A stretch of 64,000 nucleotides of DNA from sequence record OR413585.1; one strand, given 5' to 3'. The notes under the pieces are model-generated. The model was not told the DNA's origin, did not search any database, and saw nothing but the letters and a program-made list of their open reading frames with translations. The position numbers and the translations under genes are program-made. This document shows, in pieces, positions 5,121 through 12,990 of this stretch (positions within the stretch are counted from its first letter, which is position 1; each line of letters begins with the position of its first letter).

Positions 5121-7232
5121 ATGATACTGCGAAAAAACGATTGGCGACACTATCCGGGGGCGATTGTTGACGATGTCACACCAAACGTGCACTTCCTTCA
5201 ATTCGCCACAACACTACAAGGATTAGGTGTCCAGCATTGGTACGTCCACCTGGCATTACACAATCCCGAACTCCGTGGTGTTGATCCGTTTAGCCCAGAT
5301 TTAACACTCGAACAAAAAGCGATGATTGTTACGGAGTGTGCGGAAAACCCATGGTACTTCTTCCGTGAGTGTGTCCGGGTCCCTGCGGATGGTGTAAAGA
5401 ACGGGATGCCGTTTCGTCTAGACCGCGGTAACTTTTCGATGTATTGGATTTTCTTCAACAACATCGACGCCGCTATCGAGTTTCTCCGTCAGCATGGTAA
5501 GACTGTCGGGATGTCCGCATTGCTATTGTGGCTGATGCGCTTCCTGGAGAACTCACGTACGATTCTTATCACGAAGGGTCCTGCCCTTCGTGAAGAAACT
5601 ATCAACAAAATGAAACAACTGCGTAACGCGTTACCGGATTATCTCTGGCCTCATCACCCGGACGATCCTGATAACCGTGAGACATTTGCATGTCTAGCGC
5701 AGGGTAACAAACTTATCACCGGCATCGGTCAAAACGATAAGGAAGCTGCGAACGGGGTAGGCCGTGGACTCACAGCCGGACGCCTGTTCTCGGATGAAGG
5801 ACCGTTTACCAACAACATCCACCATATCCTCCCTGCTGCACTAGCATCGGGTACCGCGGCGCGTCGTATTAACGAAGCCGAAGGTGTTCCATACGGCAAC
5901 GTCTTCGCAACAACGCCTGGGGATTTGGCGACAGAAGAAGGCGAGTACATGTACAGCCTGATGACGTCGGGGATTTCGTGGGATGAACGGTATATCGACA
6001 TTCCGACTCGTGCACAACTGATTGACATGATTCGCAAAGGCTCTACTGCGAAGATTCCACGTATCATGTTCTACGTGAAATACAACCACCGCCAACTCGG
6101 TACCACGGACGAAGAACTCGCAGATATGATTGCGAACGCCCCAGGTACACCAGACCAAATCCGCCGTGACTTCGGTGGTGAATGGACAACCGGTGGTTAC
6201 AACAAACCGTTCTCAGGCGATGATGCAAGACGTATGAACGCCTCGCGTATTCGGGCAGCACAGAAAATTATCTCTGCTTCCAACTACGTAACGGATTGGT
6301 ATTACACTGAAGAGCAGATGCTGGTTAAAATGCAAGACCGCCACATCATCGGTTTGGATACTTCCGAAGCCGTGGGGCGGGACGCCATTGCCATGTCAAT
6401 CGTCAACTCTGTCACTGCCGAATATGCCGGCAAGCTCACCGTGAACGAAACAAACGTCATCGGGTTTGCGATTCACTTAGCAGACTTCATGATCGAATAT
6501 CCGAACACGGTACTCATTCTGGAACGACGGTCTACCGGCTCCTCGGTAGCAGATGCCATTATACTGCAGCTGCAATCTAAGGTTCGCGATTTGCATCGTC
6601 GTTTGTACGTGAAAGTGACCCAGGATTACTCAAGGAACGATGAACTTTACAAAGAGTTCCATCGTGGCCCTGTGGGCAGTCCAGAGCGCTTCTGGGACAA
6701 ATTCCGTAAATACATCGGTTTCTCAACCGACCAGGATAAACGCCGTAAGTTGTATGGTGAAGTATTTACCACGGCGTTGCGTCTTTCTGCGGACTTACTG
6801 CGGTCAGGCGAATTGATCGACCAAATCCTCGGTCTCGTCGAACGAAACGGGCGCATAGACCACCGTGCATCCGGTCACGATGACCTGGTAATATCCTGGC
6901 TTCTGGCAATGTGGTTACTTCTGTTCGGCAACAACTTAGGCCACTACGGTATAAGTAACAGCCGACTGATGATGCGCAACCGCAATATGCTCGGGGGCAT
7001 GGCAGGTGAATTCGATGAAGAGGCTGCAGTCGAGGAAGAAGAAAAGCAACAACAACTGATGGGGCAAATTGAAACGATGATTAGGCAGAGTCAAGTTGTA
7101 GCCGATCCGGTACAACAGCTCATGTACAAGAATCGTATTCAAGCGCTCGTCTCTCAACTCAACACTGACGTTCGTAACGTCGCATCGATGGAAAGCTTGA
7201 AAGAGCTAATCCAACGACAGAGGATGAAGTGA
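5121..7232 (+). CDS. terL: Terminase large subunit
   Basis: ECAENPWYFFRE N-terminal motif, Walker A-like LRQHGKT, Walker B LFSDEG, RNase H-like nuclease motifs IIGLDTS and HDDLVIS. Confidence 0.9.
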   Translation: MILRKNDWRHYPGAIVDDVTPNVHFLQFATTLQGLGVQHWYVHLALHNPELRGVDPFSPDLTLEQKAMIVTECAENPWYFFRECVRVPADGVKNGMPFRLDRGNFSMYWIFFNNIDAAIEFLRQHGKTVGMSALLLWLMRFLENSRTILITKGPALREETINKMKQLRNALPDYLWPHHPDDPDNRETFACLAQGNKLITGIGQNDKEAANGVGRGLTAGRLFSDEGPFTNNIHHILPAALASGTAARRINEAEGVPYGNVFATTPGDLATEEGEYMYSLMTSGISWDERYIDIPTRAQLIDMIRKGSTAKIPRIMFYVKYNHRQLGTTDEELADMIANAPGTPDQIRRDFGGEWTTGGYNKPFSGDDARRMNASRIRAAQKIISASNYVTDWYYTEEQMLVKMQDRHIIGLDTSEAVGRDAIAMSIVNSVTAEYAGKLTVNETNVIGFAIHLADFMIEYPNTVLILERRSTGSSVADAIILQLQSKVRDLHRRLYVKVTQDYSRNDELYKEFHRGPVGSPERFWDKFRKYIGFSTDQDKRRKLYGEVFTTALRLSADLLRSGELIDQILGLVERNGRIDHRASGHDDLVISWLLAMWLLLFGNNLGHYGISNSRLMMRNRNMLGGMAGEFDEEAAVEEEEKQQQLMGQIETMIRQSQVVADPVQQLMYKNRIQALVSQLNTDVRNVASMESLKELIQRQRMK

Positions 7233-10130: not shown

Positions 10131-10640
10131 ATGTTTACTGCGCCAACCGTGCAGGTGGGGCAAGGTCTTAACCTGGTGGTACATGACCAGCGGTTAATCG
10201 ACCTCTGCGACACAAGCATAATTACTGCGATGATGGACCATAACCCTTTAGGTGACTACGGAAATACCAGCGAGATTTTGGCTGTTGCTGCCGTCCTCCG
10301 TCGTATTTACGGTCAAATAACCATCGTAGATCTCTGTAACTTCATTGACAACCACAGAGATTTAACTAAAGGGTTGGTCGCACTTACTCAAGATGGTGTG
10401 TCAAGTTTTGACAGTTCTCTTGGTAATTTCCTAGACATCGGTTCCGGGTTCGACTCCGGGCTAATGTTCATCACTCGTGAACGCTACGTCGCCGTCTGGG
10501 AATTTCTGCAACGCATGGGTGTGCATGTTCCTGCAAAGATCATGCATTACCAAACTTACGACCTGAATATTTTCGGGGAGCCAGGGTTATGGATAAAACC
10601 AGTACACCTTGGCCTTGATGGCTACACCATCAAGTGTTAA
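10131..10640 (+). CDS. Hypothetical protein (169 aa)
   Basis: Start moved from 10086 to the ATG at 10131, which follows AAGGAG; ends just before a terminator. Confidence 0.7.
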   Translation: MFTAPTVQVGQGLNLVVHDQRLIDLCDTSIITAMMDHNPLGDYGNTSEILAVAAVLRRIYGQITIVDLCNFIDNHRDLTKGLVALTQDGVSSFDSSLGNFLDIGSGFDSGLMFITRERYVAVWEFLQRMGVHVPAKIMHYQTYDLNIFGEPGLWIKPVHLGLDGYTIKC

Positions 10641-10647
10641 GTCACTA

Positions 10648-10698
10648 GGCGTACTCTCTTCGGGGAGTACGCCAATCTTATTTTTTTTTTATTTTTTT
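10648..10698 (+). terminator. Intrinsic terminator
   Basis: GGCGTACTCTC-TTCG-GGGAGTACGCC followed by a long T run. Confidence 0.85.
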
Positions 10699-11233
10699 GG
10701 TTACTTTTTAACCAACCGGTTAAAGGGGTCTGGGAAGCATCAGAAAACGATTAGGTGGTATCGACGTAGGGTAGCTCGTTTTTGGCAGTTTATCGTTTTC
10801 TAGGGTCGGTTACGTGCGTTTTAGAGGGGGTTATGTATCGAGACAGAGAATTTATTTTTGTCGAGGCGAGGAAATTCAGGGAATGGGGATTCAGGATTGT
10901 ATGTTTTTTAACCAGTTATTAAAAACGCTCTAGAAAGCGCTAGAACGAGATTTAACTCAGACCCAGTACACTTGGGTTCCCTATACCGGAAAATCGCGCC
11001 AGCGGGCCGCTGAGAGCGCGAGAGTGCCATTCCCGTTTCGGTTCCGAGGTGACGGTCGCGGCCGGCGACGACGATCACACGTTGGGTAGCACTTCGTGCC
11101 ATGTCTGAGTGAAAACTGGATCGTTCTGTAACCGACACACACTGTCGGTTACTTACGAGTTCTTTGGGTTGTTTAACTCGCTCTAAAATCCCCCTTAGGG
11201 GATAATTTAATCTAATTCTCAAAATTTCTTTTT

Positions 11234-11490
11234 AAAACAATCACTTAGATTGTTTTTTAGATTGATCCTGTGGATCGGGTCGAAGACCCTTTCCTTATAC
11301 GCGTGCGCGTGCGCACACCCGTATCCTCCAGGATCTTTTAAAAGATATATAATAATATTAAATATAATAATACCTTTAGGTATTATATTTAATTATTATA
11401 ATTATTTATATAAATAAATATATTAATATATTAAGATCTTAAAACGCGTGCAGGCGCGCGCGTGATCCTTATTAAGAGATCGTGATCGGA
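11234..11490. other. Candidate replication origin or packaging site: AT-rich palindrome cluster
   Basis: About 110 bp of almost pure A/T made of stacked palindromes, flanked by ACGCGTGC on both sides; 7 GATC sites between 11264 and 11487. Confidence 0.45.
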
Positions 11491-12400
11491 CGGAAGTCCT
11501 AGTTTGGGTACCCTGTGTATTTTTTACGTGGTTTCCCTATCGTGTGTTCAGACCACCACTCGATGTCCAAAACCCATAGCTTCGGTGGTCGCCTCCCTGG
11601 TCGGTAGACTCTGACAAGTCGACCCACAACACCAACCCGTCCGGGGACGGATTTTTATTCCAACGACAAGCTCCACGAAAATCCCCGCAGAGGGACTCAC
11701 CGCTGTGTGACTCACCGGCTCCTGGACGCCTACGCCTCGAGCCGGTAATTTTTTGATTACGTGAGTTTGTTGTTATATGCGAATAGCGATTGACCGCGCC
11801 AATGGTCCAATCACTTTTAAACCCTGTACGCTAGGGCTCCAAGTCCTGGGACTGATACCCAGGACGCTTTTTCGAAAATACCTACCGTGGTGTCTTCGAC
11901 AAAGCGCAATCTAACACTGCGTGATTTATTATGTTCTGGAAAACTTTCGCCGTGGAACAGAACCGGTGAGCGTCGGCGGGGATTCCGACAATCACCACCC
12001 ATTCAGGTACTCGGTAAATAACCGACCTGCCGACGGTGCTACGTCGGGCGTAGTTCGGTTTGCGAGAGTGTCGAGAAAGTCGACTGCGCACCCATGACAA
12101 AATCCGAGTTGACCGTGGCAGCGCCAGAGGACTGGGCAGCGGAGAGACGTCGTTGAACTTACCTCCGATAGTTATCGCTGATTCCGCTCTGGCGTCGGGC
12201 CAAAACTGATTCGAATTCGGCGTTGCGTCGAAAAGGGGTCTGCGTGTAGAACCGCAGACTTGGGGGATAACTCCGATGAGGAGGTTGGTCCATATCTTGC
12301 CGGCTCGGAACAGACGAGAGGGGTGGGTACTCCCGTTGTGAAACGCCAGTACCTGGCTGATTAAAATTTACAGATTCTGCGTGAGGTATGATAAACCAAA
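11490..12400 (+). ncRNA. Putative structured non-coding RNA block (one large or several small RNAs)
   Basis: No credible ORF; more than ten hairpins, GAAA/GTGA loops, and three stems followed by T tracts. Strand inferred from the T tracts. Confidence 0.4.
12362..12391 (+). promoter_or_regulatory. Candidate promoter (TAAAATTTAC ... GGTATGAT)
   Basis: Middle-type motif plus TATG upstream of the GGAG RBS of the 12415 gene. Confidence 0.45.
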
Positions 12401-12414
12401 CGGAGAATTAAACC

Positions 12415-12990
12415 ATGAACTTGTATCGCATCGGGTTTTACCGAAACGAGATGCCTGAATCGGTTTTGGTTGTCTTAGCCGAAAACGAGGAGCAGGCCAA
12501 ATCCTTCTGGCCGGTTAGCGCAGAGCGTCCAGCGGTTGCGTGCTGCTACGACGGCGCTGTGTCTACCCCGATGGTTACGCCTGGGGTGGTTCTGAAGCAA
12601 GGCCGTTGGGATGATTATTCCCATCCTGGTTTGGAATTTGTTTCCGAATCCGCCAGACACACCTGGAATCTTACCACGGGTAAAACCAGAGTGTATTTCG
12701 GCCACCAAGCCAAGCAACCGTCGCTCATCAAGCTGTACCTGGTTTACAGCGACGTCGCTACCGAAGACTATGTCGACGCCGGAATCATCGTCGGGGCAAC
12801 AACCCCCGAGGCGGCATTCGCACATTGGGACGGCGATAAACCCGGAATCGTTTCGGTTTGTGAGCTACCACTTGAAGCCGGTTTGGTTACGAACATCAAG
12901 TGTGAGCAAGGCCAGGAGCTGACTTGGATGCGCCAGGATTACCTGACGGAAACGACATTCGAGTACACACCGAGGAAGGTGACCCAATGA
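12415..12990 (+). CDS. Hypothetical protein with two copies of a small domain
   Basis: GGAG RBS; MNLYRIG..VVLAENEEQA and IKLYLVY..IIVGATTPEAA resemble each other and the 13714 protein. Confidence 0.7.
   Translation: MNLYRIGFYRNEMPESVLVVLAENEEQAKSFWPVSAERPAVACCYDGAVSTPMVTPGVVLKQGRWDDYSHPGLEFVSESARHTWNLTTGKTRVYFGHQAKQPSLIKLYLVYSDVATEDYVDAGIIVGATTPEAAFAHWDGDKPGIVSVCELPLEAGLVTNIKCEQGQELTWMRQDYLTETTFEYTPRKVTQ

What the first reader, a model, noticed from the sequence alone, without database searches (positions are those of the whole stretch)
11234..11490. Origin- or pac-like module: stacked AT palindromes in a GATC cluster
About 110 bp (11336-11444) contain only 7 G/C bases. They consist of ATCTTTTAAAAGAT (11333), ATAATACCT-TT-AGGTATTAT (11367), TATTTATATAAATA (11403), AATATATTAATATATT (11417) and TTAAGATCTTAA (11431). 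ACGCGTGC brackets the core at 11299 and 11444, and seven GATC lie in 224 bp. AAAACAATC/GATTGTTTT and GGGTC-GAA-GACCC hairpins lie just upstream (all seen). An unwinding element with cruciform potential and Dam sites resembles an oriC-type layout; I know of no established origin for this phage group (inference).
Basis: partly seen in the sequence, partly recalled or inferred. Interest (0 to 1): 0.65.

Follow-up and report, generated by a model that had tools for sequence, protein, structure and literature searches.

The report
Candidate replication origin of jumbo phage
In the largest gene-free gap of a giant, nucleus-forming Salmonella phage lies a conserved, untranscribed DNA element that is the genome's easiest place to unwind, its densest cluster of GATC methylation sites and its longest Z-DNA-prone tract; it is the best candidate for where this phage group starts copying its DNA (less likely packaging it), but the function is untested.

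Summary
The window is Salmonella jumbo phage SPLA5c (Seoulvirus, SPN3US-like, 239 kb).

The site is a triple genome-wide extreme:
- lowest duplex stability (z 8.5, next 4.7);
- densest GATC cluster (7 in 224 bp, next 4), in a genome with GATC at 0.53 of expectation;
- longest alternating purine/pyrimidine tract (23 nt).

The same three extremes coincide at the homologous locus in whole genomes of three other genera: Asesino, Huxley and Kwan. The architecture is modular. Sequence-conserved border boxes flank an A/T core whose composition is kept while its sequence and length vary. Two short hairpins sit at fixed positions with genus-specific stems.

RNA-seq contigs stop at the left border and resume 225 bp later, so the element acts as DNA. 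It is not an oriC-type origin: it has no DnaA boxes, 13-mers or iterons. The pure-A/T palindromes are mostly compositional. Skew analysis is uninformative. Assembly ends inside the core look like library artefacts.

Best reading: an unwinding-element origin with GATC/Dam control (0.42). Rivals are a P1-pac-like packaging site and a transcription boundary.

The scan has already flagged this element in related genomes.

The parts
11215..11256 (+). Block I: conserved A/T-rich motif ending in invariant ACTT, overlapping the hairpin AAAACAATC/GATTGTTTT (11234-11256)
   Evidence: Invariant columns A18-20, T28, A31-33, A36 and A40-T43 in the 11-genome alignment. It is unique in the genome. It resembles the phiKZ middle-promoter description (A-rich run plus TACT, PMC8244752), but that is not shown here.
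11264..11276 (.). Upstream GATC pair (11264, 11273), 9 bp apart
   Evidence: A pair or triplet of GATC lies 46-79 bp left of the left box in 10 of 11 relatives.
11277..11289 (.). Short G/C hairpin GGGTC-GAA-GACCC
   Evidence: Relatives carry a hairpin here with a different sequence.
11296..11318 (.). Alternating purine/pyrimidine (CG/TG) tract of 23 nt, Z-DNA-prone, forming the left G/C clamp
   Evidence: It is the longest such run in the genome (next 18). The homologous tract is also the longest run in Asesino (21), Huxley (21) and Kwan (25).
11319..11346 (.). Block II, the left border box: ..TCCTCCAGGATCTTTTAAAAGAT, with the invariant GGATCTTTT and the palindrome at 11333-11346
   Evidence: GGATCTTTT is invariant in 11 of 11 relatives. 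RNA contigs from upstream end at 11327-11332.
11336..11444 (.). A/T core (109 bp, 7 G/C): the putative DNA unwinding element
   Evidence: Genome-wide melting minimum. A/T composition is conserved while sequence and length vary (59-110 bp) among relatives. No RNA contig covers it in three RNA runs.
11367..11386 (.). Hairpin H1 (ATAATACCT-tt-AGGTATTAT)
   Evidence: P 0.002 against shuffles. In 7 of 8 relatives that have it, the centre lies +43.5 to +45.5 from the left-box GATC (+37 in phiEaH2). Stems differ between genera: ACCT/AGGT, ATCT/AGAT, TCCC/GGGA.
11402..11434 (.). H2-equivalent zone. Here it holds only A/T palindromes (11402-11417, 11417-11432, 11423-11434).
   Evidence: Relatives carry a G/C-bearing hairpin H2 at +80.5 to +83.5 (+75 in phiEaH2), always 37-39 bp after H1. 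In SPLA5c the palindromes are not above compositional expectation.
11431..11442 (.). Palindrome TTAAGATCTTAA carrying the inner GATC (11435)
   Evidence: An inner GATC lies 27-30 bp before the right-box GATC in SPLA5c, phiEaH2 and the Kwan type as well.
11444..11464 (.). Right G/C clamp (ACGCGTGC..GCGCGCGTG), repeating the ACGCGTGC of the left clamp
   Evidence: It is present in all relatives, in a long or a short form.
11460..11488 (.). Block III, the right border box: GTGATCCTTATTAAGAGATC plus GTGATCGG, with three GATC (11464, 11478, 11484)
   Evidence: GATCCTTA is nearly invariant. An 18-mer of this box retrieved relatives of this phage group (plus three unrelated contigs) from 2.9 million viral contigs.
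11519..11531 (+). Block IV: T-run plus invariant TTAC, upstream of the abundant non-coding RNA. It is probably that RNA's promoter region rather than part of the core element.
   Evidence: TTAC is invariant. The abundant RNA 5' end is at 11558, seen in transcriptome runs X17 and X18 and in the independent metatranscriptome run X15.

Best explanation
The element (about 11215-11490) is a cis-acting DNA signal. Most likely it is the replication initiation site of SPN3US-like nucleus-forming jumbo phages.

Proposed mechanism:
1. Under negative superhelical stress, the 109-bp, 93% A/T core is by a wide margin the first place in the 239-kb genome to open.
2. The G/C-rich clamps on both sides confine the bubble. 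The left clamp is a 23-nt Z-DNA-prone tract.
3. The two conserved border boxes and the position-fixed hairpins H1 and H2, formed in the opened strands, give phage replication proteins their landmarks. Candidate proteins are the DnaB-like helicase and the split DNA polymerase, which are encoded elsewhere in the genome.
4. The ring of GATC sites is methylated by the phage's own Dam-class enzyme (or by host Dam). It marks the site as new or old after passage of a fork, so that firing can be timed, as at oriC and P1 oriR.
5. A transcript that runs up to the left border may supply an R-loop primer, as at T4 oriF/oriG and the T7 primary origin.

Shown: uniqueness, conservation, architecture, non-coding status, absence of RNA over the core, and presence of the methylase gene.
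Inferred: every functional step.
For: 1. Triple genome-wide extreme at one spot: melting minimum (z 8.5 against 4.7), densest GATC cluster (7 against 4) in a GATC-depleted genome (0.53 of expectation), and longest alternating Pu/Py tract.
2. The same three extremes coincide at the homologous locus in complete genomes of Asesino, Huxley and Kwan, which belong to three other genera.
3. The conservation pattern is that expected of an unwinding element between protein-binding borders. Blocks II and III are sequence-conserved. The core keeps its A/T content but not its sequence or length.
4. H1 and H2 keep position and spacing (38 +/- 1 bp) while their stems change with compensating substitutions. 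Each is individually non-random.
5. No RNA contig covers 11333-11495 in three RNA libraries. Upstream RNA ends at 11327-11332, and very abundant RNA starts at 11558. The element therefore acts as DNA, and a transcript does end at its edge.
6. A D12 (Dam-class) methyltransferase is encoded by SPLA5c (E 1.6e-52) and by Asesino, Huxley and Kwan.
7. The more distant phage CR5 has an analogous island: 8 GATC in 250 bp in a genome at 0.18 of expectation, a melting minimum (z 6.4) and an adjacent G-rich tract. It sits at another locus, next to the DNA polymerase gene and 18 kb from the terminase gene. That placement fits replication better than packaging.
8. The element lies in the largest gene-free gap of the genome.
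Against: - There is no experimental or read-depth evidence.
- Cumulative GC skew follows gene orientation only.
- A two-replichore fit to third-codon GC skew places the best origin at 7-11 kb, but the gain (3%) is within the permutation null (95% quantile 5.6%).
- No initiator gene, iterons or DnaA boxes were found.
- The neighbouring 169-aa protein has no family match. Its structure model is unusable (pLDDT 53).
- T4-like phages replicate mostly by recombination, and their origins are dispensable.
- GATC clusters flanking a central region also describe the P1 pac site.
- CR5 has its island without a phage Dam gene.
- Wellingtonvirus-type relatives lack H1 and H2.
Confidence: 0.42

Rival explanations
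1. The element is a packaging initiation (pac) site of the P1 type. Terminase, with an unknown recognition subunit, binds GATC-containing boxes on both sides, bends or extrudes the A/T centre, and makes the first cut there. Cutting is gated by Dam methylation. Headful packaging then runs from this point.
For: - The layout is three GATC on the left and four on the right of a roughly 100-bp centre, within 224 bp. It parallels P1 pac, which is 161 bp with seven TGATCA/G hexamers as 4+3 around the cleavage and IHF sites, and is methylation-regulated (PMC10028697).
- The phage encodes a Dam-class methylase.
- The large terminase gene ends 4.1 kb upstream.
- Several GenBank records start or end inside the core: SPN3US bp 1 = 11228; Proteus phage 7 = 11367; SPFM2 11365/11381; Lh1B, EC001, JN03 and SPFM17 at 11428/11429.
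Against: - The GATC hexamers are heterogeneous (TGATCC, GGATCG, GGATCT, AGATCT, AGATCG, TGATCG).
- The family is described as circularly permuted, T4-like headful, with no small terminase known (PMC5694885, PMC6614189).
- The records that break here come from PCR-amplified short-read libraries (NexteraXT and SPAdes for the SPFM set). Other SPFM records, run X2, and metagenome assemblies G002, G003 and G005 cross the element unbroken.
- An extreme unwinding element and a Z-DNA-prone tract are not needed for pac.
- In CR5 the analogous island lies beside the DNA polymerase gene, not near the terminase gene.
Confidence: 0.17
2. The element is a transcription boundary or control region. It stops the upstream transcript and insulates or boosts the very strong promoter of the downstream non-coding RNAs. 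The A/T core would act as an upstream promoter element or as a binding platform for a phage DNA-binding protein.
For: - RNA contigs end at its left edge, and RNA at up to about 10^5-fold k-mer depth starts 115 bp to its right.
- Blocks I and IV look promoter-like. Block I is A-rich plus ACTT. Block IV is a T-run plus the invariant TTAC, a motif that recurs at 11 intergenic sites on the + strand.
- Short hairpins followed by T-rich sequence occur in the core of relatives.
Against: - The distances between Blocks II, III and IV vary by tens of bp between genera. Promoters tolerate this poorly.
- None of the about 20 copies of the genome's main promoter-like motif (ATAGATATTATCT), and none of the other strongly A/T-rich intergenic regions, carries a GATC cluster or an alternating tract.
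- A 109-bp, 93% A/T core, a GATC ring kept in four genera against genome-wide depletion, and the longest Z-prone tract are unexplained by termination or promotion alone.
Confidence: 0.2
3. The element has another DNA-structural role. It could be an anchoring, partition or condensation site for the genome inside the phage nucleus, or a recombination hotspot that seeds recombination-dependent replication through cruciform cutting.
For: - There is strong self-complementarity (z -5.0).
- The phage encodes SbcCD-like palindrome nuclease subunits, a RuvC-like resolvase and a UvsX-like recombinase.
- The element is single-copy and unique.
Against: No partition genes or repeated binding sites were found. 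No direct evidence of any kind is available.
Confidence: 0.12

Closest known systems
Phage T4 oriF/oriG and the T7 primary origin (promoter followed by an A/T-rich unwinding element; R-loop priming)
   Same: Here too a promoter-like conserved block lies upstream of an extreme A/T unwinding element, and a transcript ends at the element's edge. The phage is T4-like in its terminase and UvsX, so an early origin phase followed by recombination-driven replication is plausible. The T4 and T7 mechanisms are stated from established knowledge.
   Different: The promoter status of Block I is unproven, and no R-loop or RNA-DNA junction has been shown. T4 and T7 origins have no GATC ring, no Z-prone clamp and no fixed hairpins. 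The core here is about twice as long.
E. coli oriC and P1 oriR (Dam/SeqA-controlled origins)
   Same: GATC sites cluster around an A/T-rich unwinding region. The methylase is available, both from the phage and from the host.
   Different: There are no DnaA boxes, no 13-mer repeats, no IHF consensus and no iterons. Replication takes place inside a protein-walled phage nucleus that is thought to exclude most host proteins.
Bacteriophage P1 pac site
   Same: Seven GATC sites are split 3+4 around a central region of about 100 bp within about 220 bp. Methylation-dependent control is possible. The phage packages by headfuls.
   Different: The site is not inside a terminase gene. The hexamers are not uniform. 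No IHF site or small terminase is known. The extreme A/T core and the Z-prone tract have no counterpart in P1 pac.
Phage N4 early promoters (DNA hairpins with a 5-7-bp stem and a 3-nt loop, extruded from supercoiled DNA)
   Same: In most relatives H1 and H2 are hairpins with a 5-8-bp stem and a 3-nt loop, set in easily melted DNA.
   Different: N4 uses a single-subunit virion RNA polymerase, whereas these phages have multisubunit enzymes. No transcript starts at H1 or H2 in the RNA contigs. The resemblance is recalled from the literature and was not tested here.

Membership tests
oriC-type (DnaA-dependent) origin | Cluster of DnaA boxes (TTATCCACA) | tested here: not met
   There are 0 matches with up to 1 mismatch in 11150-11560 on either strand.
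oriC-type (DnaA-dependent) origin | Tandem A/T-rich 13-mers (GATCTnTTnTTTT) | tested here: not met
   There are 0 matches with up to 2 mismatches.
oriC-type (DnaA-dependent) origin | GATC over-representation around the unwinding element | tested here: met
   There are 7 GATC in 224 bp, the densest cluster in the genome. The cluster is conserved in relatives.
Iteron origin (lambda ori, P1 oriR, plasmid Rep origins) | Repeated initiator-binding sites (iterons) beside an A/T-rich region, with the initiator gene adjacent | tested here: not met
   Outside the A/T core, the only repeated 8-mers are the bracketing ACGCGTGC, the internal CGCGTGCG/GCGTGCGC repeat of the left tract, TTAGATTG (11245, 11257) and two that reach into the core (TTTTAAAA, TATTAAGA); none forms an iteron array. 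The neighbouring genes have no recognisable initiator domain.
Transcription-primed phage origin (T4 oriF/oriG, T7 primary origin) | Unwinding element immediately downstream of a phage promoter | tested here: inconclusive
   The unwinding element is clear. Block I is conserved and promoter-like but unique in the genome. RNA contigs cannot show a start or a strand.
Transcription-primed phage origin (T4 oriF/oriG, T7 primary origin) | Persistent R-loop, or an RNA-to-DNA transition, in the element | not testable with these tools
   The only relevant observation is that RNA contigs end at 11327-11332.
P1-type pac site | Two groups of uniform TGATCA/G hexamers flanking the cut site | tested here: inconclusive
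   The 3+4 arrangement is present. The hexamers are heterogeneous, and only 3 of 7 are TGATCS.
P1-type pac site | Preferred molecule ends or cuts at the site in virion DNA | not testable with these tools
   Only contigs could be laid. Record ends inside the core are confounded by A/T dropout.
Structured RNA gene | Transcribed, with covarying helices | tested here: not met
   No RNA contig covers 11333-11495 in three RNA libraries. There is no Rfam match. H1 and H2 covary, but they lie in DNA for which no transcript was recovered.

The most novel reading that the evidence does not exclude
The GATC-ringed unwinding element may be a methylation-licensed, supercoil-sensing origin, with Z-DNA and hairpin switches at its borders. 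Besides starting lytic replication, it would let these 'strictly lytic' nucleus-forming phages be copied once per cycle as an episome in the carrier-like state. That state has been proposed to explain why hundreds of Seoulvirus genomes turn up in bacterial isolate assemblies (PMC12768965).
Probability: 0.07. Interest if true: 0.85.

Novelty: new variant of a known kind. Interest (0 to 1): 0.6.

Why it matters
No replication origin or packaging signal has been mapped for any nucleus-forming (chimalli-) jumbo phage. How replication starts inside the phage nucleus is an open question.

This element gives a single, sharply bounded, conserved 300-bp target. It can be tested directly by marker-frequency sequencing, by plasmid amplification or transduction assays, by methylation mapping and by deletion.

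It also has practical value:
- An origin or pac fragment is what is needed to build shuttle vectors or transducing plasmids for these hard-to-engineer phages.
- The extreme A/T core is a recurring breakpoint in short-read assemblies of the group.

Tried and rejected
- Rfam scan of 9-14 kb: only the tRNA was found.
- Whole-genome cumulative GC and AT skew: it follows gene orientation and shows no V-shape at the site.
- Two-replichore regression on third-codon skew: the best origin falls at 7-11 kb, but the fit is not significant.
- Sigma-70 promoter scan: no more hits than in shuffles.
- The genome's main promoter-like motif (ATAGATATTATCT, about 20 copies): absent from the element at up to 2 mismatches. 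H1 matches only 10 of 13 positions, and I do not rely on that.
- Block I as a member of a promoter family: no other copy in the genome.
- Neighbouring proteins as initiator or small terminase:
  - Pfam and PHROGs give only families of unknown function.
  - ESM-Atlas suggests a DUF772 transposase-like DNA-binding domain for the 169-aa protein. The score is 0.95, so this is a lead only.
  - Homologues occur only within this phage clade.
  - The AlphaFold model has pLDDT 53, so no fold search was run.
  - In SPAsTU and SNUABM_29, other genes sit between this gene and the element. The linkage is therefore loose.
- Record ends inside the core as evidence for physical ends: rejected as indecisive.
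- Scan of viral contigs with the 16-mer of the left box: mostly chance hits, so only loci that also carry the right box were used.
- Search for the same module downstream of the terminase gene in CR5, Vibrio phage pVp-JHP1101 and phiKZ: not found there.
- Literature search for an SPN3US or phiKZ origin or pac site: none found.

Full report
IDENTITY AND SETTING

The window is bases 1-64000 of Salmonella phage SPLA5c (OR413585.1, 239,099 bp, genus Seoulvirus). It is an SPN3US-like, nucleus-forming jumbo phage. I rebuilt the whole genome from the public record for genome-wide statistics.

The finding lies in a 1.8-kb stretch without genes (10641-12414). On its left are four genes of unknown function that follow the large terminase gene (5121-7232). 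On its right are a 191-aa gene of unknown function, an HslV-like peptidase gene and a tRNA.

THE OBSERVATION

The composition is extraordinary.
- The stretch 11336-11445 has 8 G/C in 110 bp, against 27 for the next most A/T-rich 110-mer of the genome.
- With nearest-neighbour energies, it is the global minimum of duplex stability: z 8.5 for 100-bp windows, against 4.7 for the runner-up.

GATC occurs 495 times in the genome against 932 expected. Even so, seven copies lie within 224 bp here, and no other 224-bp window has more than four.

The 23 nt at 11296-11318 are a perfect alternating purine/pyrimidine CG/TG tract, the longest in the genome.

The 'stacked palindromes' are less special. Dinucleotide-preserving shuffles of the core give almost as many (P 0.015-0.05; the longest arm is not significant). 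The pure-A/T palindromes are therefore mostly compositional. The one hairpin that contains G/C pairs (H1, 11367-11386) is non-random (P 0.002). The whole 181-nt single strand folds better than all 200 shuffles (z -5.0).

COMPARATIVE ANATOMY

A blastn search with the 411-bp region finds the central 200 bp at about 79% identity in Erwinia phages of three other genera. A scan of viral contigs with 18 nt of the right border box retrieved relatives of this group; three of the ten hits were unrelated contigs carrying the 18-mer alone.

I aligned eleven distinct versions: Seoulvirus, Erskinevirus, Machinavirus, Wellingtonvirus, a Caitlin-type phage and three metagenomic contigs. The alignment shows four sequence-conserved blocks separated by variable spacers.
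- Block I: an A/T-rich motif ending in invariant ACTT.
- Block II: the alternating G/C tract followed by ..TCCTmCAGGATCTTTT.
- Block III: ..GTGATCCTTATTAmGAG.
- Block IV: invariant TTAC after a T-run.

Between Blocks II and III the sequence is free, but it stays above 80% A/T in ten of the eleven versions (75% in Caitlin). Its length ranges from about 60 bp (Wellingtonvirus type) to about 110 bp.

Two short hairpins keep their place inside this core.
- H1 is centred 43.5-45.5 bp from the GATC of Block II.
- H2 is centred at 80.5-83.5 bp.
- The H1-H2 spacing is 37-39 bp in all seven relatives that have both. This includes phiEaH2, where a deletion shifts both hairpins by 7 bp.
- The stems differ between lineages. 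H1 stems are ACCT/AGGT, ATCT/AGAT and TCCC/GGGA. H2 stems are CCC/GGG, CTC/GAG, CTACTAC/GTAGTAG and ATCT/AGAT.
- So the dyad is selected, not the sequence.
- SPLA5c has only A/T palindromes at the H2 position. The Wellingtonvirus type lacks both hairpins.

GATC clustering is significant in each relative (P 2e-2 to 2e-8 against its own flanks). The GATC sites of Blocks II and III are at conserved positions, and the other GATC positions vary.

I then fetched the complete genomes of Asesino, Huxley and Kwan. In all three, the homologous locus again holds the global melting minimum (z 9.4, 6.8 and 6.1). It also holds the top GATC cluster (tied in Huxley) and the longest alternating tract (21, 21 and 25 nt). 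GATC genome-wide is at 0.36-0.44 of expectation.

CR5 is the next relative outward (terminase 70% identical). It lacks this module at the syntenic place. It has an analogous island elsewhere:
- 8 GATC in 250 bp, in a genome where GATC is at 0.18 of expectation;
- the melting minimum (z 6.4);
- an adjacent G-run tract.
This island lies just downstream of the DNA polymerase gene.

IS IT RNA OR DNA?

Contigs from two transcriptome libraries of one study and from one wastewater metatranscriptome were laid on 10600-12500.
- RNA contigs cover about 10530/10766 to 11327/11332 at modest depth.
- Nothing covers 11333-11495.
- From 11558 onward there is very abundant RNA. Adapter-joined ends mark 11558 as a defined 5' end in runs X17 and X18, and a contig of the independent run X15 also begins exactly there.
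- In run X18 the depth is 321 to the left of the core and 0 just to its right. This is a real transcription boundary and not only A/T dropout.

The core and both border boxes therefore act as DNA, and some transcript ends at the left border. Contigs cannot give strand or true ends, so whether Block I is that transcript's promoter stays open.

TESTS OF PARTICULAR MODELS

oriC-type or iteron origin. There are no DnaA boxes, no 13-mers, no IHF consensus and no iterons. Membership is rejected.

Skew. Cumulative GC skew tracks gene orientation. A regression that separates transcription strand from replication direction at third codon positions puts the best origin at 7 kb, with 11 kb nearly equal. 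It explains only 3% of the variance, which is inside the permutation null. This is neither support nor refutation.

Methylation. SPLA5c encodes a D12-class (Dam family) adenine methyltransferase at genome position 110468-111262 (E 1.6e-52). Asesino, Huxley and Kwan encode one too. CR5 and phiKZ do not. CR5 nonetheless has a GATC island, so the link to a phage-borne methylase is not strict.

Packaging. The 3+4 arrangement of GATC sites around a centre of about 100 bp is strikingly like P1 pac. Several GenBank records begin or end inside the core. SPFM2 both ends and begins within H1, with a 17-nt overlap.

However, those assemblies come from PCR-amplified short-read libraries (NexteraXT and SPAdes for the SPFM set). 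Seven other SPFM records, a bacterial-isolate run (X2) and metagenome assemblies cross the element intact at arbitrary distances from contig ends. The authors describe the genomes as circularly permuted, and the family is thought to package like T4. I read the record ends as coverage dropout in 93% A/T DNA, not as physical ends. That leaves pac possible but unsupported.

Neighbouring genes. None has a recognisable initiator or small-terminase domain. The 169-aa protein upstream gives only a language-model lead to a transposase-type DNA-binding domain and an unusable structure model. It is not always adjacent to the element.

INTERPRETATION

The conservation pattern has four parts:
- composition, but not sequence, is kept in the centre;
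- sequence is kept at the two borders;
- dyads are kept in place with compensating changes;
- GATC density is kept against genome-wide avoidance.

This is the signature of a DNA element that has to open and be recognised at its edges. An origin of replication fits all four properties.

I commit to an unwinding-element origin with methylation-based control and possibly transcript priming, at 0.42. The closest functional models are T4 oriF/oriG and the T7 primary origin for the promoter-plus-unwinding logic, and oriC and P1 oriR for the GATC logic. It is a member of none of these families.

The rivals are:
- a P1-like pac site (0.17);
- a transcription boundary or enhancer for the neighbouring RNA genes (0.20);
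- other structural roles (0.12).

The fact that CR5 keeps an equivalent island beside its DNA polymerase gene, far from its terminase gene, tilts the balance toward replication.

RELATION TO EARLIER WORK OF THIS SCAN AND TO THE LITERATURE

The scan has already flagged and followed up what is evidently the same element in related Erwinia and Salmonella jumbo phages and in CR5. Those notes reached the same tentative reading.

I re-derived the key statistics independently on four whole genomes. New here are:
- the RNA-contig gap;
- the fixed H1/H2 geometry;
- the explanation of the record ends;
- the non-significant skew test;
- the placement of the CR5 island beside the polymerase gene.

I found no paper that maps an origin or pac site in SPN3US-like or phiKZ-like phages. 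One study reports that Ori-Finder gives only low-reliability predictions for related giant phages.

Noticed in passing
window 11558-12418: There are very abundant small RNAs with defined ends. Adapter-joined 5' ends are at 11558, 11975/11986 and 12021-12023, and 3' ends at 11818 and 12108. K-mer depth reaches about 1.7e5 around 12008-12071. A contig starting at 11558 also appears in an independent wastewater metatranscriptome. These RNAs belong to the neighbouring finding on 11490-12410.
   Followed up: partly
window 10530-11332: A modestly expressed RNA (contig depth 18 and 321 in two runs) covers the gene-free stretch left of the element and ends at its left border. Its strand and start are unknown. 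Terminator-like hairpins lie at 10648-10673 (+), 11188-11203 (+) and 10947-10926 (-).
   Followed up: partly
whole genome; in the window e.g. 16500, 19464, 27374, 35930, 37346, 41089: A near-palindromic motif ATAGATATTATCT, preceded by AAAnATTTCAG and followed by nAGTGA, occurs about 20 times on the + strand in intergenic positions. It is probably the clade's (early?) phage promoter consensus. CR5 carries the same motif at the end of its record.
   Followed up: partly
window 11520, 18024, 27231 and eight further + strand sites in the genome: TTTTTTAC recurs at 11 intergenic + strand sites, often just after a terminator hairpin. Its TTAC is invariant in the relatives of Block IV. It may be a second promoter class or a terminator-promoter junction.
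   Followed up: no
genome 110468-111262 (outside the window; L004:10468-11262): A D12-class (Dam family) adenine methyltransferase gene is present, in a genome with GATC at 0.53 of expectation. GATC is depleted to 0.36-0.44 in Asesino, Huxley and Kwan, and to 0.18 in CR5, which lacks the gene.
   Followed up: partly
L140 (LR535912.1, SPFM14) 1-1300, and probably the other SPFM records that matched in 19-28 pieces: The first kilobase or more of these GenBank records consists of blocks of about 70 nt in reversed order. It looks like a line-order error made when the records were re-oriented, not like biology.
   Followed up: partly
CR5 NC_021531.1 13200-13440 (L194): There is an analogous island beside the DNA polymerase gene: two G-runs (GGGGGAGGGG-like), then an A/T-rich stretch with 8 GATC in 250 bp and a hairpin of about 11-bp arms.
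   Followed up: partly
window 10131-10640: A 169-aa protein conserved only in this phage clade has language-model features nearest to DUF772 (the N-terminal domain of IS5-type transposases; score 0.95). There is no Pfam match, and the AlphaFold model is poor (pLDDT 53).
   Followed up: partly
runs X2-X14: The region is held at 77-86% of its words in many roughly 5-Mb bacterial isolate assemblies. This fits the report that Seoulvirus genomes are common in bacterial assemblies, which has been read as a possible carrier state (PMC12768965).
   Followed up: no
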